From positions 124,001-188,000 of IMG/VR virus record IMGVR_UViG_3300035698_035366: DNA of 64,000 bases; one strand, given 5' to 3'. Shown here in pieces: positions 13,252 through 20,808 of the stretch (its first letter is position 1; every line of letters starts with the position of its first letter). Position numbers and translations under genes: made by a program. Under the pieces are notes generated by a model. The model did not search any database and was not told the DNA's origin. It saw nothing but the letters and a program-made list of their open reading frames with translations.

Positions 13252-13740
13252 ATGGACAGATATTACCAAGTTACCTCTGCCAATTCTGATGATCTTTCGG
13301 AGTTAGTGTCAGCTGTTGCTGATATTTTAAGCTATTTCGAAGATGAATATATGGAAGGCAAAATTGATATCCAGATTAAGGGGGCGGTCGAACGGGCCGC
13401 CTCCAAAATCCCTGGTATCACCGAGCATCGATGGTCACAACTCCAAGAATTAGAGGCCATTGTTGTTTATATTGAAACCGTTGTAAAAAAAGCTAAACAG
13501 CGAGCATTCAAGAAATATTTTGAAAATTACAACCGCCAGCTATCGAGTCGCGATGCGCAAATTTATGCAGACGCCGATGATGATGTTTTGAATAAAGCTG
13601 AGGTTTTGAACCAAGTTACCTTCATGCGTAATAAATTTTTAGGAATTTATAAGAGCATCGAAGCGAAGCATTGGCAACTCAACAACATAACAAAGTTGCG
13701 AACATCCGGAATGGACGACGCGTTTATTGATTACGATTGA
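13252..13740 (+). CDS. uvsY: Recombination mediator UvsY-like
   Basis: Helical protein with KKYFENYNRQLSSRDAQIYADAD and K-W-Q-L-N-N-I-T-K-L-R pattern, directly after uvsX. Confidence 0.75.
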   Translation: MDRYYQVTSANSDDLSELVSAVADILSYFEDEYMEGKIDIQIKGAVERAASKIPGITEHRWSQLQELEAIVVYIETVVKKAKQRAFKKYFENYNRQLSSRDAQIYADADDDVLNKAEVLNQVTFMRNKFLGIYKSIEAKHWQLNNITKLRTSGMDDAFIDYD

Positions 13741-13748
13741 TTATATAC

Positions 13749-13777
13749 TTGACTTATCATATTATGCTATGTATAAT
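13749..13777 (+). promoter_or_regulatory. Sigma70-type promoter
   Basis: TTGACT-17 nt-TATAAT. Confidence 0.8.
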
Positions 13778-13803
13778 TAAGTTTAATAGATAGAGGTATA
13801 TCA

Positions 13804-14517
13804 ATGTCGACGCACTTAGAAACCATTGTTGAAGAAGTTGCAGGTATATTCCATCATCTTCAATGGGACCAAGATAAATCCTTGAAAGTTTCACCCGCTG
13901 ATTTCAAATTCATTACTGATATCGCTGGCAAAACGAGTCAAGGTAAGCAAATCTCAACCAAGCAAGCCGAGGTTGCAATTCGTATTTTGCAGAAATATAT
14001 TACTGTACTTCCCACAAGGGACAATTTTCCATGGTCTGAGGAAGAGTTAAGCGCGGCAATTTCTATGCCCATTTATCGTCAACCCCCCTATCAAAGCGTT
14101 CCAGTCCGCCGTGAAGTTCGGTATATTGGTAATCGCAAAATAGCACTTCGGTCGAAATTTTCCCCTCAAGTTACGAAGAGGATACGATCAACAGTTGATA
14201 AAAAATGTATCCGTAATGTTATTGGTCGTTCTAGATATAACCATAACCAATTTGATTTTCCACGTTTTAATAAGAAACACAGACTCTGGGTAATCGAGGT
14301 TACCGAGGGAAACCTAGAAGCTGTAATGAGAACAGTTAAGAAAGCTAATTTTGAGTTCGATGATTCGGTCGTACAATTTCTAACGGATTGTGCAAACACC
14401 GTTGAAAACGAAACCACTATCAGCTCGGTTGATAATGAAATTGAAATTATCGTACAAAACGATGAATTTATGTCTTTGTGGTTAGATGATACCTTTAAGG
14501 AGAAGAAAAGTGTTTGA
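13804..14517 (+). CDS. Hypothetical protein
   Basis: 237-aa ORF with RBS GAGG, after the sigma70 promoter. Confidence 0.6.
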   Translation: MSTHLETIVEEVAGIFHHLQWDQDKSLKVSPADFKFITDIAGKTSQGKQISTKQAEVAIRILQKYITVLPTRDNFPWSEEELSAAISMPIYRQPPYQSVPVRREVRYIGNRKIALRSKFSPQVTKRIRSTVDKKCIRNVIGRSRYNHNQFDFPRFNKKHRLWVIEVTEGNLEAVMRTVKKANFEFDDSVVQFLTDCANTVENETTISSVDNEIEIIVQNDEFMSLWLDDTFKEKKSV

Positions 14518-15445
14518 TCGAGTAAGAATACCGAGAACTCCAAAGAACGCCCGGAAATTGATATATTGGGGGAATGTGAATTATACCACAATTCCTGATG
14601 ATCTTCAGAACCTTGCAATGCAGGATCATGTTTACCATCCAGATCCACAAGTACAAGAAGCCTGGCAGTATCTCATTGACAGAGATAATCGAGCAGTTAT
14701 TATGAACGATGTAGATGATATGCATCGTAATAAGAATCTTGTTTTTGATCACTTCACTAATCAAAAATTATTCCCGATGGTAATTATCGCTACTGAAGAG
14801 TTTGATGAATGGCTTAAAATTGCCAGCAATTTTGCAACTACGCATGAAAAGACAATGCAGATTGTGACAGGTAAGGATAATGCAAGTTCAATCGATGAAA
14901 ATTTAAAAACATCTGTGGTCGAAAACGCTGAAAACGGCCATGACATCTATGTCATAGACACAGTAAAAGATATAAACATTATATTGGACAGTATTTTTCC
15001 AGCAACTTCGATAAAATCATTAATTTATGATGTCACGGAAAAACACAGAGACAAAGGCCAGAGTAATCGGTATACTTTTGGTCTCCGCCAACGATATGAG
15101 TCTAACGACACTCTTCGGGCATTGTTTCTGGAAATCCCAAATGCTGTTATTCTTGCATCATACGAGGATATTTTTTCATTGCATAAAGGAAATAATGGGA
15201 AAAGAATAAACGATGTATCTTTGGATACGGAAGGTTTTGCATTTATTAACCATTTGCTGTATAATGAGAAAATACTACCAAAAGCATTCCCAATTGAACA
15301 TGATAGTATCAAGAAACAATTAAGCGACAGTGGTTATAAACTAACCGACGAAACGTTTTTAGCATACTTTCCTTTAATTGGCATTTCAACCGCCCTTTTA
15401 GGAGACAACCATGGATCAACTGCAAACAATGTCATTCCTGAGTAG
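14510..15445 (+). CDS. Hypothetical protein (possibly a degenerate helicase-like alpha/beta fold)
   Basis: Long ORF with a probable GTG start at 14510 after AGGAG. No intact catalytic motifs were recognised. Confidence 0.5.
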   Translation: MFDRVRIPRTPKNARKLIYWGNVNYTTIPDDLQNLAMQDHVYHPDPQVQEAWQYLIDRDNRAVIMNDVDDMHRNKNLVFDHFTNQKLFPMVIIATEEFDEWLKIASNFATTHEKTMQIVTGKDNASSIDENLKTSVVENAENGHDIYVIDTVKDINIILDSIFPATSIKSLIYDVTEKHRDKGQSNRYTFGLRQRYESNDTLRALFLEIPNAVILASYEDIFSLHKGNNGKRINDVSLDTEGFAFINHLLYNEKILPKAFPIEHDSIKKQLSDSGYKLTDETFLAYFPLIGISTALLGDNHGSTANNVIPE

Positions 15446-16049
15446 AAATAATAAGAACAAACTTGTGACGCTTAGAATAAGCAGGTCAGTTGACCCGTTC
15501 GAACAAAAGAATTTTCGATACATTAATCGCCAACTTCATATGACTGTAGGTGTAACTTCACCTACAAGCAAGCCGGAAGAATGGATTGAAGTTGAATCAT
15601 TCGAAGATGCTGAGCGCCAAGCTGTAAGGCTTATGGTTGATTTGGAGCCAGATTTTGAAATCAATCTCAATTCACGTCGAGCAAGAGATGTTCTTGCGGC
15701 AATGGGAAACCGTGTCGCAACCCTGTCTACTCGAGGCAATGCAACCAATTATATTGTGCATCCCAATCATGAAGAAACGCTTCATAGCCTTCTAAAAAGT
15801 TCTAACCGCGCATCAGTTTATGCAAACAAATATTGTCCAGAAGATAAAATGATGGTAGTTTTCAAAAATGCGCTACCTACAATGGCTATCGACGGGGCTT
15901 TTCATTATCTGTATGACAATGAGAGTGGCAAGCATTGGTTATGCACGGTGAAGGGGAAACCTACTGATATTACCTGGAAGCATTATATTTCTGTTGCTCA
16001 TATCGTTAACGGAACTGATTCCGATGAAGAGGATGAATCTTTTGACTAA
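15411..16049 (+). CDS. Hypothetical protein with a segment resembling the gp23-type capsid protein
   Basis: MGNRVATLSTRGNATNYIVHP resembles the capsid ANxIAxxTRRGxGNxxxxSP motif. RBS AGGAGA. Confidence 0.5.
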   Translation: MDQLQTMSFLSRNNKNKLVTLRISRSVDPFEQKNFRYINRQLHMTVGVTSPTSKPEEWIEVESFEDAERQAVRLMVDLEPDFEINLNSRRARDVLAAMGNRVATLSTRGNATNYIVHPNHEETLHSLLKSSNRASVYANKYCPEDKMMVVFKNALPTMAIDGAFHYLYDNESGKHWLCTVKGKPTDITWKHYISVAHIVNGTDSDEEDESFD

Positions 16050-16425
16050 ACCTAGATTTAAATTCGGCCCAATCCCCGAGGGTTATCACATGATTGACCC
16101 AAACGTTTATCTCCCTATGGATGAAAACGAAACGGTTTGGGAGAGCCTGTTGGGTTTTGAATTTGGTGGTGACGTCCGATGGAAGCTATCGAAGATCCAT
16201 GTCTATGAAAATGGATACAGATTCTCAAAGAGTATAAAGATATTGTATTTCGAGGATGAAGCTGATTTGGTCATGCTTAGGCTTATGCTTGACCGAAACG
16301 AACATAAGTCCGAACGGGTTTTTACTCTAGATGAACACGAGAAGATGAAGAAGATTCGGGATATAGCGATCGCCCGTGGTCGTATTAAGAATGCAAATAA
16401 TCCTGATTCGAATTCTATTTTTTAA
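16033..16425 (+). CDS. Small protein, FxxxxDAxLFKL-motif family (divergent)
   Basis: Contains ILYFEDEADLVMLRLML. Probable ATG at 16033. Confidence 0.55.
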   Translation: MNLLTKPRFKFGPIPEGYHMIDPNVYLPMDENETVWESLLGFEFGGDVRWKLSKIHVYENGYRFSKSIKILYFEDEADLVMLRLMLDRNEHKSERVFTLDEHEKMKKIRDIAIARGRIKNANNPDSNSIF

Positions 16426-16447
16426 AAGTCTGAAGATATAATAAGAA

Positions 16448-16474
16448 AGATGGGCCCGAAAGGGCTTATTTTTT
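16448..16474 (+). terminator. Intrinsic terminator
   Basis: GGGCCC-GAAA-GGGCTT followed by ATTTTTT. Confidence 0.75.
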
Positions 16475-16642
16475 GACTAAAATTCCAAGTAATACCAAAT
16501 AATTATTAAATTGCTGTATCCTAGTAATAAATAAAGTATATTATAAACTACCCTAATTATTGAATTAATTACTTTAAATTTGACAAGAGTAATAGTATTC
16601 GTGTTATTATTTCCTAATAATAAATTAATAAAGGAAATAATA

Positions 16643-17089
16643 ATGAATATAGAATGTAATAAAGTATTTGAATTTAGTTTAGAAAATATACAATTCGCAT
16701 ATCTTAGTCGGGAAGAAGTATTTAATATATTGTCCGATGGTCGAGTATCAAGTCATTTTTTAGAAAAATTACTTGAAAAATGGTTCCCGGAACTTGTACA
16801 TGTTGATAAAAAAGGATATGACCATATAGATTCTTTTAATTTTAAATACGACCAAAAATGTTTCACATTTAATGGTTTGAAGTTTATGCCAAGTAATCAG
16901 ATTGGTCAAGGTAGAAAATTTGATATAGAAAAATCACACATACATGCCCAAGAAATAACTTATATATGCTGTAGTGTATATGATTTGCCAACCGTTCGTG
17001 TTATTTTCAAAAAAGGTCGAGATTTAGTTAGAGATTTCCCTCAATGTCAAATTAAGTTCAATGACCGATCCTATTTGTTTAATAACTAA
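16643..17089 (+). CDS. Putative restriction endonuclease (PD-(D/E)xK-like)
   Basis: DGRVSSHFLE, YDH…YDQK and PSNQIGQGRK motifs; adjacent to an MTase; very AT-rich. ATG 16643 follows AAGGA. Confidence 0.5.
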   Translation: MNIECNKVFEFSLENIQFAYLSREEVFNILSDGRVSSHFLEKLLEKWFPELVHVDKKGYDHIDSFNFKYDQKCFTFNGLKFMPSNQIGQGRKFDIEKSHIHAQEITYICCSVYDLPTVRVIFKKGRDLVRDFPQCQIKFNDRSYLFNN

Positions 17090-17115
17090 ATATACAAAAA
17101 TAAAGGGAGCAATAT

Positions 17116-17919
17116 TTGCATATGACGTCAAGAGATTTAGATCAATTTTATACGAAAGAATCAATTTCTTTGGAATTGTACAATATATCTAAAAACTATA
17201 TTACCGATTTTAATGATTACGATATTATATTGGAACCGTCGGCCGGATCAGGATCTTTTTTCAAATTATTTCCTGAAAAACAAAGACTTGGTTTAGATAT
17301 CGAGCCAAAATTCAACGATATAGTTAAACAAGATTTCTTTGAGTTTAAACCAAATCCATTTTTAAGTTATATAACAATTGGAAATCCTCCATTTGGTAAA
17401 AATGCAAGTTTAGCAATTAAATTTTTTAATAAATGTTCTGAATTTTCTAATTATATATGTTTTGTGGTCCCTAAAACATTTCGTAAAGTTTCGTTACATA
17501 ATAAATTAAGTTTAAACATGCATCTTATATATGATAAGGAATTGCCGGAGAATTCATTTATATTTAATGATAATCCATATAATGTACCATGCTGTTTCCA
17601 AATTTGGCAGAAAGCTACAACGAAACGGAAAATTATCCCCCCTATTTCTTATCATACCGATTTTGAGAGGGTTGATGATGTTTCCCTAGCAGATTTTATT
17701 TTTCAGCGCGTTGGCGCGCGCGCTGGAACATTAAAAACAGACAATCTTCTAAAATGGGGGAAAACTAGTCATTATTATATCCGCTCAAAGATTGATAAAC
17801 AACTTATTATTTCTAGATTCAACGAATTAAACTTCGATGAAGTTAAATATAATACTGCTGGAAATCCAAGCATCTCATATTCTGAAATCATACGTTTATA
17901 TACAGATAGATATACTTAA
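17116..17919 (+). CDS. DNA adenine (amino) methyltransferase
   Basis: DQFYT, motif I EPSAGSGSF, motif IV GNPPFG. Confidence 0.9.
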   Translation: MHMTSRDLDQFYTKESISLELYNISKNYITDFNDYDIILEPSAGSGSFFKLFPEKQRLGLDIEPKFNDIVKQDFFEFKPNPFLSYITIGNPPFGKNASLAIKFFNKCSEFSNYICFVVPKTFRKVSLHNKLSLNMHLIYDKELPENSFIFNDNPYNVPCCFQIWQKATTKRKIIPPISYHTDFERVDDVSLADFIFQRVGARAGTLKTDNLLKWGKTSHYYIRSKIDKQLIISRFNELNFDEVKYNTAGNPSISYSEIIRLYTDRYT

Positions 17920-18033
17920 ATTATTAATCAGCGCAGGTAATACCAAGTACTCGTTAAATTATATTGAAACCATTACTTGTTTTATACTATAGTAAATATA
18001 GTAATAATAATAACAAGGCTAATAAACAAAGTA

Positions 18034-19062
18034 ATGGCAAAAGACCAATGCACACTAGTAATTGAAGATGAAGTCAACATTAAGTTCAACAATTTAGATC
18101 CAGCAACAAGGCGGAAAGTTGTAACAGAACTAAAATTCTTTGTCCCTTATGCACGTCACACACCAAGCTTCAAGCTTGGTAGATGGGATGGCACTATAAG
18201 CTTAGCCACAACAGGTGGTCGTACTTTCTTCAACCTTCTTGACCGTGTCCTTCCCATAATTATGGATGAAGGTTATGAAATTAAAATTGAGGATCAGCGG
18301 GCTAGTCTTGAACTAGAATTTCCAAAGGCAACGGTTGATATGTTCTCCGATACATTATGGCCAAAAGGTCATATGAATGAGGGAGAACCAATCATTCTAC
18401 GGGATTACCAAGCAGATGTTATTGATGCGTTCTTGCGCAACCCACAGAGTTTACAAGAGATTGCCACCGGCTCCGGTAAGACGATCATAACGGCGGCTCT
18501 TTCAAAACTTTGTGAACCATATGGAAGAACAATTGTTGTTGTCCCAAATAAGGATCTAGTCACACAGACAGAAGCTGATTATATCAACCTTGGACTTGAT
18601 GTTGGTGTATTTTTTGGTGACAGAAAAGAATGGAATAAAACTCATACTATTTGTACATGGCAATCATTGTCGGTTCTTGATAAAAAATCTAAAAATAAAT
18701 TGGCCCTAACCGATGAAGAACTAAACGATTTCCTCAACAATGTTCAAACTATTATTGTTGATGAATGTTTTCACGGGGATTCGTTGGTATTAACCCCAAA
18801 TGGATATATACCTATAAAAGATATTAAATCGGGAGATATTGTTGTTAATTATGATGAAAAAGAGAAATTATTCAAAAACGATGTTGTTAAACAAATATAT
18901 GAAAATTTAACAAATTCATCTAAGGAAGAAATGCTTGAACTTGTATTTGATAATGGTAAAATAATTAAAGTTACAGCTAATCACAAATTCCTAACAAATA
19001 AAGGCTGGATTAGGGCCGATGAATTAAATGAACATCTAACCATTATTGACATAAATACATAA
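18034..19062 (+). CDS. uvsW: UvsW-like SF2 helicase N-terminal half fused to split-intein N fragment
   Basis: LRDYQ Q-motif and IATGSGKT Walker A. The protein ends IIVDE followed by CFHGD…TANH…, an intein N domain. Confidence 0.9.
   Translation: MAKDQCTLVIEDEVNIKFNNLDPATRRKVVTELKFFVPYARHTPSFKLGRWDGTISLATTGGRTFFNLLDRVLPIIMDEGYEIKIEDQRASLELEFPKATVDMFSDTLWPKGHMNEGEPIILRDYQADVIDAFLRNPQSLQEIATGSGKTIITAALSKLCEPYGRTIVVVPNKDLVTQTEADYINLGLDVGVFFGDRKEWNKTHTICTWQSLSVLDKKSKNKLALTDEELNDFLNNVQTIIVDECFHGDSLVLTPNGYIPIKDIKSGDIVVNYDEKEKLFKNDVVKQIYENLTNSSKEEMLELVFDNGKIIKVTANHKFLTNKGWIRADELNEHLTIIDINT
18766..19059 (+). mobile_element. Split intein N fragment (IntN, 98 aa)
   Basis: Block A CFHGDSLVLTPNG…IKDIKSGD and block B IKVTANHKF, then TAA at 19060-19062. 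Confidence 0.9.
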
Positions 19063-19081
19063 AGCTAAAGGAGATGTATTT

Positions 19082-19975
19082 ATGCCAAAAAAATTTAATA
19101 TAATCAGATTTAATCAATTATTAATGAAACATAATCAAATATTACAAGCCAAATATATCAACAAACAAATAATGCTTACTAATGGAGTTGAGATTATCAC
19201 AATTCCGGAAGTTAGAAAATGTAAACGTCGGGTAATGAATGAATCTATTGAATATATTACCAGATTTGATTTAATATATTCCGGTAATGAAAATTTAGCT
19301 AAAAACGCATTACATGAAGCAAAATCTAAATCAGCATCTGTTGGTGGTAAGAAATGTCAAGAAAAGCATGGTGATTTAATAAAGAAAAATCTTAACACTG
19401 GCATACCTTGGAACAAAGATACTCAAGGTAATTATCCATATTCATTTCCATGTACCAAACAAACCAGAGAAAAAATAAGTAAAGCTAATTCAGGAAAACA
19501 TAATGGAATGTATGGTAAGAAAATGTCAGAATTTGATAAGAGTTATCGAAGCGAACTAATGAAAAATAAAATCAAAAATGGTGAATTTACACCTAATAGT
19601 AATAATAGAAATACTCATTGGGATTCGCATTATGATGGTAATAAATATAGAAGCTCATGGGAAGCACTTTATCATGCTAGTGATCAGGCGGCAGAATATG
19701 AAACTCTTCGAATACCATACAATATAAATGGTGTTGAGCGAATTTATATAGTTGATTTTGTAAATCATTCTACTAAAAAGGCAATCGAAGTAAAACCAAA
19801 ATCACAATTACAAAATTGCTATGAGAAAATAGAAGCATTAAAAGAATGGTGTTATAATAATAATTATGAAATGATAATAGCTGATGAAGATTATCTTCAA
19901 AAAATAGATAAAACAAAAATTAATTTTTCGTTGTTTGATGAAAAAACATTAACTAAAATTGGTAATATTAGATGA
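19082..19975 (+). CDS. Free-standing homing endonuclease (NUMOD3-like DNA-binding segment + TnsA/gp4-like nuclease domain)
   Basis: TREKISKANSGKHNGMYGKK, then YRSSWEA…IPY…YIVDF…IEVKP. Own RBS AAAGGAG; different frame from the two intein halves. Confidence 0.8.
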   Translation: MPKKFNIIRFNQLLMKHNQILQAKYINKQIMLTNGVEIITIPEVRKCKRRVMNESIEYITRFDLIYSGNENLAKNALHEAKSKSASVGGKKCQEKHGDLIKKNLNTGIPWNKDTQGNYPYSFPCTKQTREKISKANSGKHNGMYGKKMSEFDKSYRSELMKNKIKNGEFTPNSNNRNTHWDSHYDGNKYRSSWEALYHASDQAAEYETLRIPYNINGVERIYIVDFVNHSTKKAIEVKPKSQLQNCYEKIEALKEWCYNNNYEMIIADEDYLQKIDKTKINFSLFDEKTLTKIGNIR

Positions 19976-20076
19976 AATTAGTTTCTACAAAAATTATTGA
20001 AAAACCAGAAACCGTATATAATTTAGAAATCGAAAATGATCATAATTATATTGTTGAAGGAGCAGTTGTTTCAAAT
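19972..20076 (+). mobile_element. Split intein C fragment (IntC, 35 aa)
   Basis: Block F VYNLEI…HNY and block G VSN followed by +1 Cys (20077-20079). Confidence 0.9.
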
Positions 20077-20808
20077 TGTCACATGGCAAAGGCTGATGTT
20101 CTAAAAGGTCTTCTAACATCTGCATTCAAGGATTGTCCAATTCGTTGGGGGTTAACCGGGACCATTCCAAAAGAAGATCACGAATTCCTTTCAATTCTTT
20201 CAAGTATTGGCCCAGTCGTTGGAAGCCTAGCAGCAAAAGATCTTCAAGACATGGGTGTTCTTTCAAACTGTCATGTTGAGATTTGTCAACTTCAAGATCA
20301 GCAAGTATTTGGTGATTATCATTCAGAGCAAAAATTCTTATCAGAAAACCCCAACCGTTTAGATTGGGTCTCAAAATTTGTTGAAAATATTTCTAAAGAT
20401 GGCAATTCTTTAATTCTTGTAAATAAGATAGCGACGGGTGAAGCGTTACAAGCAGCAATTCCAGATTCAGTGTTTATATCAGGCAAAGTCAAAAGCGTTG
20501 ATCGAAAAGACGAGTATGATGCAGTATCGTTGGAAGATGGTAAAGTAATCATTGCAACTTATGGAGTTGCAGCCGTTGGAATTAACATACCGCGTATCTT
20601 TAATTTGTTCTTGTTTGAGCCTGGCAAATCCTTTGTCCGGGTTATTCAAAGCATTGGTCGCGGACTACGTAAAGCAAAAGATAAGGATTATGTTCAAATT
20701 TATGATATAACATCTAGTTGTAAATTCAGTAAGAGACATTTAACAGCTAGAAAACGTTTTTATAAAGATGCTGGGTACCCTTTTCGTGTAACCAAAGTTA
20801 AAATATGA
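19972..20808 (+). CDS. uvsW: Split-intein C fragment fused to UvsW-like helicase C-terminal half
   Basis: MKLVS…VYNLEIENDHNYIVEGAVVSN|CH, then WGLTGT (motif III), IATYGVAAVGINIP (V) and QSIGRGLR (VI). Confidence 0.9.
   Translation: MKLVSTKIIEKPETVYNLEIENDHNYIVEGAVVSNCHMAKADVLKGLLTSAFKDCPIRWGLTGTIPKEDHEFLSILSSIGPVVGSLAAKDLQDMGVLSNCHVEICQLQDQQVFGDYHSEQKFLSENPNRLDWVSKFVENISKDGNSLILVNKIATGEALQAAIPDSVFISGKVKSVDRKDEYDAVSLEDGKVIIATYGVAAVGINIPRIFNLFLFEPGKSFVRVIQSIGRGLRKAKDKDYVQIYDITSSCKFSKRHLTARKRFYKDAGYPFRVTKVKI

What the first reader, a model, noticed from the sequence alone, without database searches (positions are those of the whole stretch)
16489..17960. AT-rich endonuclease + adenine MTase cassette bracketed by an imperfect 24-bp direct repeat
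Seen: a clear NPPF-type MTase preceded by a 148-aa putative nuclease. Both are visibly more AT-rich than their neighbours, lie between a terminator and the helicase, and are flanked by GTAATACCAA-n8-TAAATT at 16489 and 17937 (20/24 identity). Inference: a recently inserted phage-borne restriction-modification-like unit for host DNA degradation or exclusion of competing phages; the repeat may be an insertion scar.
Basis: partly seen in the sequence, partly recalled or inferred. Interest (0 to 1): 0.6.

Follow-up and report, generated by a model that had tools for sequence, protein, structure and literature searches.

The report
Phage-borne GTAC restriction-modification gene pair
A giant T4-like phage carries a recently acquired pair of genes, a small DNA-cutting enzyme of the RsaI (GTAC) family and an adenine methylase that should protect the phage's own DNA; relatives of the cutter in other phages show that such viruses shield themselves either by methylation or by having no GTAC sites at all.

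Summary

The small ORF is a PD-(D/E)XK nuclease. It has invariant D60, D/E70-x-K72, a confident model closest to NhoI/PvuII, and a predicted homodimer. It matches PADLOC's Type II REase profile and is 36-40% identical to cyanophage proteins annotated R.RsaI.

In 60 viral contigs, homologues of this nuclease lie next to:
- a homologue of this methyltransferase in 25, in three gene arrangements
- a Mom-family gene in 11
- an SPPY methyltransferase in 1
- no recognised modification gene in 23

Contigs with the nuclease but no methyltransferase have almost no GTAC: 10 of 14 lineages have none, against 6 of 79 control loci. This points to GTAC as the target.

It is therefore a mobile Type II R-M cassette in a hypervariable slot.

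Three points remain open:
- The repeat is only marginally non-random (about 1 in 100 shuffles), and no empty site was found.
- The window's nuclease uniquely has Ser for an otherwise invariant Asp111.
- The biological role (host DNA degradation or exclusion of rival phages) is inferred.

The parts
16445..16474 (+). Intrinsic-terminator-like hairpin ending the upstream gene (stop at 16425). It marks the left edge of native sequence before the AT-rich tract.
   Evidence: RNA fold dG -16.4 kcal/mol, z -4.87, 0/200 shuffles as stable. Sequence read.
16486..16512 (+). Left copy of the imperfect direct repeat (CAAGTAATACCAAATAATTATTAAATT), 11 nt after the terminator.
   Evidence: the repeat finder family D1, 22/27 with the right copy. 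Shuffles reach it in 11-16 of 1000. The composite motif is unique to these two places in the genome.
16513..16642 (+). Very AT-rich leader of the nuclease gene, with AAGGA 7 nt before the ATG. No convincing promoter was identified.
   Evidence: The upstream spacer 16426-16642, of which this is the right-hand part, has GC 0.226. The sigma-70 scan gives no site on the + strand upstream of the ORF, and sites overall are no more frequent than in shuffles.
16643..17089 (+). Restriction endonuclease gene, 148 aa. It is a PD-(D/E)XK enzyme of the RsaI-like family with catalytic candidates D60, D70 and K72. It has Ser111 where the family has Asp.
   Evidence: PADLOC REase_II PDLC03550, E 3.1e-9. 40% and 36% identity to 'R.RsaI endonuclease' of Syn19 and ACG-2014j. 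AF2 pLDDT 94.2. NhoI Z 7.4 and PvuII Z 6.6. PvuII by Foldseek, prob 0.92. Residue conservation in 225 sequences. Homodimer ipSAE 0.73 against 0.01 for the best control.
17122..17919 (+). DNA methyltransferase gene, 265 aa (267 aa if it starts at TTG 17116). Motif order is X (DQFYT), I (EPSAGSGSF), IV (NPPF), then a C-terminal target-recognition region. This is the gamma-type order of an adenine-N6 enzyme.
   Evidence: PADLOC MTase_II PDLC03255, E 1.2e-43, full length. phrog_5172, E 3e-71. AF2 pLDDT 94.2. Foldseek hits to M.TaqI, CamA, M.BseCI and Erm/KsgA at E about 1e-5 to 1e-6. Invariant motifs in 27 homologues.
17934..17960 (+). Right copy of the direct repeat (CAGGTAATACCAAGTACTCGTTAAATT). 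It lies 14 nt after the methyltransferase stop and 3 nt before a promoter-like site for uvsW. It contains one GTAC.
17964..17993 (+). Sigma-70-like site (TTGAAA-18-TATAGT) ahead of uvsW (ATG 18034). It marks the right edge of the cassette.
   Evidence: 10 of 12 consensus matches. This is a consensus match only.

Best explanation
The segment 16486-17960 is a two-gene Type II restriction-modification cassette, carried by a large T4-like phage (a virus record of 296 kb).

Gene 1 encodes a small homodimeric PD-(D/E)XK endonuclease of the RsaI-like family. Its fold is closest to NhoI and PvuII. It most probably recognises the palindrome GTAC.

Gene 2 encodes a gamma-type NPPF adenine-N6 DNA methyltransferase. 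It most probably methylates the same site (GTm6AC) and so keeps the phage's roughly 500 GTAC sites uncut.

The cassette is foreign DNA from an AT-richer donor. It is lodged in a hypervariable slot between the recombination genes (gp32, uvsX) and uvsW.

During infection the methylated phage DNA would be spared, while unmethylated DNA would be cut. That means the host chromosome and co-infecting phages.

Shown here: the family membership of both proteins, their catalytic motifs and folds, their repeated co-occurrence in other viruses, the compositional anomaly, and the GTAC signature of the nuclease family.

Inferred: the exact site and methylated base for this particular pair, whether this nuclease allele is active, and the biological pay-off.

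The confidence of 0.7 is a blend. I put about 0.85 on the cassette being an RsaI-like nuclease with a cognate methyltransferase that was acquired horizontally, and about 0.5 on the proposed role.
For: Nuclease:
- It matches the PADLOC Type II REase profile (E 3e-9).
- It has homologues annotated R.RsaI in Syn19, Syn2 and ACG-2014j. BFVD gives TM 0.91 to the Syn19 protein.
- D60, D/E70 and K72 are invariant in 223 of 223 family members that cover those positions, with D-x9-(D/E)-x-K spacing.
- The top structural matches are almost all restriction or PD-(D/E)XK nucleases.
- A symmetric homodimer through residues 12-47 is predicted: ipSAE 0.73, best control 0.01, a mark reached by 20/30 solved homodimers and 1/23 single chains.
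- The RsaI family was assigned to PD-(D/E)XK on theoretical grounds in PMC2441816.

Methyltransferase:
- It gives full-length PADLOC Type II MTase hits.
- Motifs I and IV are intact.
- The fold matches adenine-N6 methyltransferases.

Pairing:
- 25 of 60 viral contigs with a nuclease homologue have a homologue of this methyltransferase beside it. The arrangements are R>M>, convergent and M>R>.
- Elsewhere the same nuclease family sits beside an SPPY N6_N4 methyltransferase (Syn19, ACG-2014j, L118) or a Mom-family gene.

Specificity:
- In contigs with the nuclease but no methyltransferase, GTAC is the most depleted of all 256 tetramers (59 observed, 291 expected).
- 10 of 14 lineage representatives have zero GTAC, against 6 of 79 control loci of related phages without the gene (Fisher p 7.5e-7).
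- Five 15-kb stretches far from the gene in three such phages have 0 GTAC against 226 expected. A complete phage with the nuclease and the methyltransferase has 49 against 57 expected.
- The window's genome keeps 500 GTAC sites, O/E 0.77.

Foreign origin:
- The GC anomaly.
- None of 59 uvsW-syntenic relatives has the gene pair beside uvsW (one, L079, has only a methyltransferase homologue about 6 kb upstream), and the g13252-to-uvsW interval is variable.
- In other phages the cassette's GC matches its flanks.

Precedent for the role: chlorovirus R-M systems degrade host DNA (PMC7019647).
Against: - Ser111 replaces an Asp that is present in all 223 other family sequences. The change needs two base substitutions and is shared with the identical twin contig. 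The enzyme may be weakened, altered or dead.
- No direct comparison with authentic R.RsaI was possible. The link rests on other people's annotation and on a PADLOC profile without a name.
- Structural Z scores are below 8, in the range the tool warns can be generic. There is no Pfam or PDB sequence match.
- The methyltransferase family is large (1972 hits) and mostly orphan in other phages. JGI labels it 'predicted RNA methylase', and Erm/KsgA score as well as DNA methyltransferases. Its site is therefore not proven.
- 23 of 60 nuclease loci have no recognised partner nearby.
- No promoter was identified.
- In marseilleviruses a viral R-M system did not degrade host DNA (PMC7253447), so the chlorovirus analogy may not transfer.
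Confidence: 0.7

Rival explanations
1. The nuclease gene is a decayed or attenuated remnant (D111S), and the working part is the methyltransferase. It would act as an orphan-style protective enzyme that shields the phage's GTAC sites. The threats would be GTAC-cutting enzymes of hosts or of the many co-occurring phages that carry this nuclease family.
For: - The Ser at invariant Asp111 is unique to this protein.
- The methyltransferase family is mostly found without the nuclease (230 phage records, for example phAPEC8-like phages). One relative, L079, has the methyltransferase alone.
- Orphan methyltransferases left behind after loss of the nuclease are described for chloroviruses (PMC7019647).
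Against: - The ORF is full length.
- D60, D70, K72 and every other invariant position checked are intact.
- The gene is strongly predicted to fold and dimerise.
- The low GC suggests too little time for decay.
Confidence: 0.2
2. The small nuclease is a free-standing homing endonuclease that mobilises itself and a passenger methyltransferase into intergenic sites of T4-like genomes. It would resemble the seg/mob genes of T4 and the HEG sitting 2 kb downstream in uvsW.
For: - It has an intergenic position beside a conserved gene.
- It shares the low GC of the neighbouring split-intein HEG.
- Solitary copies occur in replication modules of other phages.
- I-Ssp6803I, a PD-(D/E)XK homing enzyme, is among the structural matches (Z 6.1).
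Against: - Genome-wide loss of the 4-bp word GTAC in carriers without a methyltransferase is what a short-site restriction enzyme predicts. It is not what a long-site homing enzyme predicts.
- The nuclease is repeatedly paired with three unrelated DNA-modifying enzymes.
- It matches a REBASE-derived Type II profile.
- It has no extra DNA-binding domain.
Confidence: 0.05
3. The flanking 24-27-bp repeat is a coincidence of two AT-rich spacers, not a trace of insertion. The cassette would have arrived by ordinary illegitimate or homologous recombination, leaving no scar.
For: - Only 22/27 positions are identical, with a wholly different 8-nt centre.
- Many comparable weak repeats occur in the same 4 kb.
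- There is no transposase or integrase in or beside the cassette.
- The motif is absent from 19 other cassettes.
Against: - The geometry is tidy. Copy 1 starts 11 nt after the native terminator, and copy 2 starts 14 nt after the methyltransferase stop and 3 nt before the uvsW promoter-like site. The copies therefore bracket exactly the low-GC DNA.
- The composite motif occurs nowhere else in 296 kb.
Confidence: 0.6

Closest known systems
RsaI restriction-modification system (Rhodobacter sphaeroides; GT^AC)
   Same: The nuclease belongs to the family that cyanophage annotators named R.RsaI. That family was predicted to be PD-(D/E)XK (PMC2441816). The in-silico signature points to GTAC.
   Different: M.RsaI makes m4C (PMC2588503). 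That fits the SPPY N6_N4 partner seen in Syn19. Here the partner is an unrelated gamma-type NPPF adenine methyltransferase. The host is a phage, not a bacterium. No direct alignment with R.RsaI itself was possible.
Chlorovirus R-M systems (e.g. CviQI, G^TAC with GTm6AC; CviAI)
   Same: They are virus-encoded adjacent nuclease-methyltransferase pairs with 2-4-bp sites and adenine methylation. Their nucleases degrade host DNA (PMC7019647, PMC2588503). Homologues of both window genes lie side by side on giant-virus MAG contigs.
   Different: R.CviQI is listed as its own unclassified family, separate from RsaI (PMC2441816). The host here is presumably a bacterium. Virion packaging of the nuclease is unknown.
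PvuII / NhoI / EcoRV-type PD-(D/E)XK endonucleases
   Same: The protein is small (about 150 aa) with D-x9-(D/E)-x-K spacing. PvuII uses D58, E68 and K70 (from my own knowledge). The predicted dimer forms through N-terminal helices. These are the best structural matches.
   Different: There is no detectable sequence similarity. The Z scores of 6.6-7.4 are modest.
M.TaqI / CamA / M.BseCI gamma-class adenine-N6 DNA methyltransferases
   Same: The motif order is X-I-IV, with NPPF and a Rossmann fold followed by a C-terminal recognition region.
   Different: It is much shorter (265 aa). It has no Pfam hit. Erm/KsgA rRNA methyltransferases match the catalytic domain equally well.
T4 host-DNA nucleases protected by base modification (EndoII/EndoIV with hmC DNA)
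   Same: The logic is the same: the phage cuts DNA that lacks its own mark. Some nuclease homologues sit inside Tet/JBP-type hypermodification clusters.
   Different: The enzymes are different and the protective chemistry is different.

Membership tests
Type II (IIP) restriction-modification system | An endonuclease with a recognised catalytic fold and motif | tested here: met
   PD-(D/E)XK: D60, D70-Q-K72 are invariant in the family. Structural matches are NhoI, PvuII, EcoRV and others. PADLOC REase_II E 3e-9. Caveat: Ser111 stands in place of an invariant Asp.
Type II (IIP) restriction-modification system | An adjacent SAM-dependent DNA methyltransferase with motifs I and IV | tested here: met
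   EPSAGSGSF and NPPF are present. PADLOC MTase_II E 1e-43. There are 32 nt between the nuclease stop codon and the ATG at 17122 (26 nt to the alternative TTG at 17116), and the genes are on the same strand.
Type II (IIP) restriction-modification system | The two gene families travel together in independent genomes | tested here: met
   They are adjacent in 25 of 60 contigs, in three arrangements.
Type II (IIP) restriction-modification system | The nuclease and the methyltransferase act on the same sequence, and methylation blocks cleavage | not testable with these tools
   This needs enzymology or a methylome. There is indirect support: genomes with both genes keep GTAC, and genomes with the nuclease alone lack it.
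Type II (IIP) restriction-modification system | A homodimer acting on a palindrome | tested here: met
   This is a prediction only: ipSAE 0.73 against a best control of 0.01, with a symmetric interface through residues 12-47.
RsaI-family endonuclease (GTAC) | Sequence homology to R.RsaI itself | tested here: inconclusive
   The protein is homologous to proteins annotated R.RsaI. Authentic R.RsaI was not available. The scan of one genome per prokaryote species found only two MAG contigs.
RsaI-family endonuclease (GTAC) | Recognition of GTAC | tested here: met
   The evidence is indirect and at family level. GTAC is the most depleted tetramer and is absent from 10 of 14 carrier lineages without a methyltransferase, against 6 of 79 controls. 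It was not tested for this protein.
Gamma-class adenine-N6 DNA methyltransferase | Motif order X, I, IV, then the recognition domain, with (N/D)PP(Y/F) | tested here: met
   DQFYT at residue 7, motif I at residue 38, NPPF at residue 88, and a C-terminal 130-265 region.
Gamma-class adenine-N6 DNA methyltransferase | DNA rather than RNA as substrate | tested here: inconclusive
   PADLOC Type II MTase profiles and the pairing with a nuclease favour DNA. Erm/KsgA folds score equally well, and JGI names the family an RNA methylase.
Transposon-like insertion with target-site duplication | Identical short direct repeats at both ends | tested here: not met
   22/27, with a non-matching 8-nt centre.
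Transposon-like insertion with target-site duplication | A transposase, integrase or other recombinase | tested here: not met
   The cassette has only the two genes. The upstream neighbours (13804-16425) have no Pfam, PHROG or PADLOC hit of that kind.
Transposon-like insertion with target-site duplication | An empty site with one repeat copy in a relative | tested here: inconclusive
   The only close relative is 100% identical and carries the cassette. The other 59 relatives are too diverged (52-61% UvsW identity) and have unrelated DNA in this slot.
Free-standing homing endonuclease | A long, rare target site near its own insertion point | tested here: not met
   Genome-wide purge of the 4-bp word GTAC in carriers argues for a short-site enzyme.

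The most novel reading that the evidence does not exclude
GTAC-cutting nucleases of this family are a widespread weapon of marine T4-like phages, jumbo phages and giant viruses. Carriers use two alternative forms of self-immunity. One is a cognate modification enzyme. The other, with no modification gene recognised nearby, is complete removal of GTAC from the genome, in effect a restriction enzyme without a methyltransferase. The window's phage, with 500 GTAC sites, would be a recent convert. It would depend on its methyltransferase both for self-protection and for protection against the same nuclease brought in by rival phages. Its unique D111S allele could be a toned-down nuclease tolerated while methylation is established.
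Probability: 0.35. Interest if true: 0.75.

Novelty: new member of a known kind. Interest (0 to 1): 0.5.

Why it matters
Complete Type II R-M systems in lytic phages are uncommon, and their role is debated. In chloroviruses they degrade host DNA. In marseilleviruses they do not.

This cassette gives a small, clonable pair from a jumbo phage. It comes with a clear, testable prediction: cutting at GTAC and GTm6AC protection.

The comparison made to interpret it gave a wider result. The same nuclease family is partnered with three unrelated modification enzymes. In many phages it has no recognised partner, and those phages have no GTAC at all.

If confirmed, this would show that site avoidance in phage genomes can reflect the phage's own nuclease rather than host defences. 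It would also give a sequence-only way to read the specificity of unknown viral nucleases.

Tried and rejected
- Megablast of 7.6 kb around the cassette against 50,697 phage records found no match.
- Pfam, NCBIfam and PHROGs gave nothing for the nuclease. Pfam and NCBIfam gave nothing useful for the methyltransferase.
- PDB sequence searches with the methyltransferase and with the nuclease profile found no hit.
- The search for an empty site gave nothing usable. Queries with the upstream genes returned only the identical twin contig. The 59 uvsW relatives were too diverged.
- The repeat as a genome-wide regulatory motif is rejected. The composite motif occurs only twice in 296 kb, and the 10-mer is absent from the other cassettes.
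- The window methyltransferase as a homologue of the Syn19 or ACG-2014j 'dam' partner is rejected. There is no similarity, and those are SPPY N6_N4 enzymes.
- The scan of one genome per prokaryote species for bacterial relatives of the nuclease found only two short MAG contigs. That scan used narrow peptide patterns, so it says little about distant bacterial kin.
- The word search with a giant-virus homologue, made to obtain a named chlorovirus relative, returned no names.
- The nuclease was looked for on five zero-GTAC control contigs and not found. They are 4-13% complete, so this is uninformative.
Stretches were fetched and counted in a script instead.
- The large representative-protein search was not needed.
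- No alternative genetic code was used.
Full report
**Setting.** The window is bases 124001-188000 of a 296,119-bp virus record. It encodes a T4-type large terminase, gp32, UvsX and UvsW. About 59 relatives were found through UvsW, with 52-61% identity for those matched over most of the query. Some lie on contigs of 290-520 kb, so this is a jumbo T4-like phage lineage.

**The observation.**
- The small ORF is 16643-17089 (148 aa). The methyltransferase ORF is 17122-17919 (265 aa, or 267 aa from TTG 17116).
- NPPF is at residues 88-91, after EPSAGSGSF at residue 38 and DQFYT at residue 7.
- The upstream gene ends at 16425. It is followed by a stable hairpin at 16445-16474 that runs into a U tract (dG -16.4, z -4.9).
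- uvsW starts at 18034, behind a promoter-like TTGAAA-18-TATAGT.
- GC falls to 0.23-0.30 across 16426-18033, against 0.36-0.41 in the flanking genes. Only 0.07% of 1475-bp windows in the genome are as low.
- The repeat extends to 27 nt (16486-16512 and 17934-17960, 22/27).
- Dinucleotide shuffles of the two spacers reach it 11-16 times in 1000. The composite motif occurs nowhere else in the genome. It is real, but statistically only suggestive.

**The small ORF is a restriction-type nuclease.**
- Pfam, NCBIfam and PHROGs are silent. PADLOC's Type II REase profile PDLC03550 matches residues 22-121 (E 3.1e-9).
- tblastn finds only five phage records: Syn19 (two records), Syn2 and ACG-2014j (two records). 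In four of them the matching gene is annotated 'R.RsaI endonuclease'. Identity is 40% and 36%.
- In 225 unique family sequences, D60, D/E70 and K72 are invariant in all 223 that cover those positions. They are spaced D-x9-(D/E)-x-K on consecutive strands of a model with pLDDT 94.
- Foldseek ranks PvuII first (prob 0.92).
- The exhaustive aligner ranks NhoI (Z 7.4), PvuII (6.6), I-Ssp6803I, Hjc, Eco15I, ThaI, EcoRV, HinP1I, NaeI and DpnI. Twenty-one of the top 24 are PD-(D/E)XK nucleases or relatives.
- The Z values are modest, but the list is uniform. Orlowski and Bujnicki had placed the RsaI family in this superfamily on theoretical grounds (PMC2441816).
- A symmetric homodimer through residues 12-47 is predicted. 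The ipSAE is 0.73 against 0.01 for the best control, with partner pLDDT at least 87 and the runs agreeing in 100% of contacts. That mark was reached by 20 of 30 solved homodimers and 1 of 23 single chains. This is what a Type IIP enzyme on a palindrome needs.

**The second ORF is a DNA methyltransferase.**
- PADLOC Type II MTase profiles match end to end (E 1.2e-43). phrog_5172 matches at 3e-71.
- The model (pLDDT 94) resembles the adenine-N6 enzymes M.TaqI, CamA, M.BseCI and Erm/KsgA.
- The family is large, with 1972 hits. It is common as a lone gene in phages such as phAPEC8.

**The two genes are a pair.**
- I fetched 60 viral contigs that encode a nuclease homologue.
- In 25 of them a homologue of the window's methyltransferase lies beside it. 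The arrangements are R>M> (as here), convergent, and M>R>. Some of these contigs are giant-virus MAGs.
- In 11 the neighbour is a Mom-family gene that overlaps the nuclease start.
- In one contig, and in Syn19, ACG-2014j and probably Syn2, the neighbour is an SPPY N6_N4 methyltransferase. It is unrelated to the window's enzyme. This fits the published statement that M.RsaI makes m4C (PMC2588503).
- In 23 no modification gene was recognised within about 2.5 kb. There the gene sits among T4-like replication genes: gp41, ligase, gp45, NT5C and 2OG oxygenases.
- In one further lineage it sits beside a Tet/JBP-type cluster.

**Reading the specificity from genomes.** If the nuclease cuts a short site, carriers without a methyltransferase must lack that site.
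- In such loci GTAC is the most depleted of all 256 tetramers. With one locus per lineage it is 59 observed against 291 expected.
- 10 of 14 lineage representatives have no GTAC at all.
- All 12 Mom-type loci have 0 GTAC against 194 expected.
- Among 79 loci of related phages (63-78% identical gp41) without the gene, only 6 lack GTAC, and overall O/E is about 0.6. Fisher p is 7.5e-7 on lineage representatives.
- The purge is genome-wide. Five 15-kb stretches far from the gene in three carriers have 0 GTAC against 226 expected. None of those contigs holds the window-type methyltransferase.
- A complete 190-kb phage with the nuclease and the methyltransferase has 49 against 57 expected.
- Three carrier lineages (L128/L129, L135) keep GTAC and remain unexplained.
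- The window's genome has 500 GTAC (O/E 0.77), four of them inside the cassette. This phage therefore needs its methyltransferase if the nuclease is active.
- RsaI is blocked by GTm6AC (PMC2588503), so an adenine methyltransferase is a workable partner.

**Origin.**
- None of the 59 uvsW-syntenic relatives has the gene pair at this place. One (L079) has only a methyltransferase homologue about 6 kb upstream of uvsW.
- The interval between the conserved g13252 homologue and uvsW varies from about 1.1 to 7.5 kb with unrelated content.
- In other phages the cassette's GC matches its flanks. Here it is 10 points lower. This argues for a recent arrival from an AT-richer donor.
- The neighbouring split-intein homing-endonuclease insertion in uvsW has the same low GC.

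**The repeat.**
- The geometry is suggestive. Copy 1 starts 11 nt after the native terminator. Copy 2 starts 14 nt after the methyltransferase stop and 3 nt before the uvsW promoter-like site.
- Against that, the copies differ in 5 of 27 positions, all of them in or next to the centre. There is no recombinase. The motif is absent from other cassettes.
- The only close relative is 100% identical over 14.2 kb.
- I put the scar reading at roughly one in three.

**Caveat on activity.**
- The window's nuclease has Ser at position 111. All 223 other sequences have Asp there. The codon differs by two bases, and the identical twin contig shares it.
- The residue ends the fourth core strand of the model. 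I could not place it relative to the active site, because the model's coordinates are not exposed.
- The enzyme may be fully active, attenuated or inactive.

**Mechanism proposed.**
- The phage DNA is methylated at GTAC by the NPPF enzyme. The dimeric nuclease cuts unmethylated GTAC in the host chromosome and in incoming rival phages.
- The family assignments, the pairing, the GTAC signature and the foreign composition are shown.
- The exact methylated base, timing, activity and benefit are inferred.
- Chloroviruses provide the precedent for host-DNA degradation (PMC7019647). Marseilleviruses show that a viral R-M system need not do that (PMC7253447).

**Not done.** No read-level or expression evidence was therefore obtained, and read laying was not used. 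No sequence was taken for human, and no alternative genetic code was used.

Noticed in passing
window 18034-20808: uvsW is a fractured gene. Its parts are:
- N-extein 18034-18765
- N-terminal split-intein half 18766-19062, which starts CFHGD and is inserted inside helicase motif II (DE|CH)
- a free-standing endonuclease gene 19082-19975 (NUMOD3 plus a TnsA-like nuclease domain)
- C-terminal intein half 19972-20076 (...VVSN|C)
- C-extein 20077-20808

Its GC of 0.24-0.27 is like that of the R-M cassette. The arrangement recalls the split-intein 'fractured genes' described from marine metagenomes (recalled from memory, not checked).
   Followed up: partly
loci L035, L037, L038, L042, L056, L058, L079-L083 against the other uvsW loci (L026-L084): The intein-plus-endonuclease insertion in uvsW is polymorphic. 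It is present in 11 of 59 relatives, L026 has an intein match without the endonuclease gene, and the rest have an uninterrupted gene. L080-L083 carry a second insertion of about 1.6 kb in the N-terminal part of uvsW.
   Followed up: partly
window 16973-16975 (codon 111 of the nuclease): Ser (AGT) stands where all 223 other family members have Asp. Two base changes would be needed. Its effect on activity is unknown.
   Followed up: partly
L230-L233, L236 (records behind L105, L108, L122); L088-L111, L116-L127: Phages that carry the nuclease homologue without a methyltransferase have no GTAC at all, also tens of kb from the gene. One of them (behind L105) has almost no GATC (1 site in 30 kb) and no ACGT, and another (behind L122) has no GATC. 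The Mom-type loci also have no CGCG.
   Followed up: yes
L128, L129, L135: These loci have a nuclease homologue, no recognised modification gene nearby, and normal GTAC counts (24-30 per 8 kb). They are exceptions to the pattern. A partner elsewhere in the genome, or a different specificity, is possible.
   Followed up: no
L004-L006 (Tara and Logan contigs): Here the nuclease homologue sits at the end of a cluster with Tet/JBP, a nucleotidyl-transferase, an AMP-binding enzyme and a weak TAGT-like hit. This looks like a DNA hypermodification cluster. L004 has no GTAC in 12.4 kb.
   Followed up: no
window 13741-18033 compared with L026-L084: The interval between the conserved 162-aa gene (13252-13740) and uvsW is a hypervariable slot, 1.1-7.5 kb long in relatives. 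The window's four ORFs there (13804-16425) have no family match in Pfam, PHROGs, NCBIfam or PADLOC. Only 13804-14517 has homologues in two relatives.
   Followed up: partly
window 17970-18037: A long-range stem (17970-17985 with 18022-18037) pairs the leader with the uvsW start codon region (dG -14.9, z -2.6). It may give translational control or may be chance.
   Followed up: partly
G000:C1:55701-57575 and 80001-82675 (outside the window; L148, L149): These are two further islands with GC of 0.30 or less in the same genome. Their ORFs have no Pfam match apart from a weak SMC_N hit.
   Followed up: partly
whole record G000: IMG/VR classes the 296-kb record as a provirus at 79% completeness. 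The same protein is seen on a 407,795-bp contig. For a T4-like jumbo phage the provirus label is doubtful, and the longer contig may be the fuller genome.
   Followed up: no
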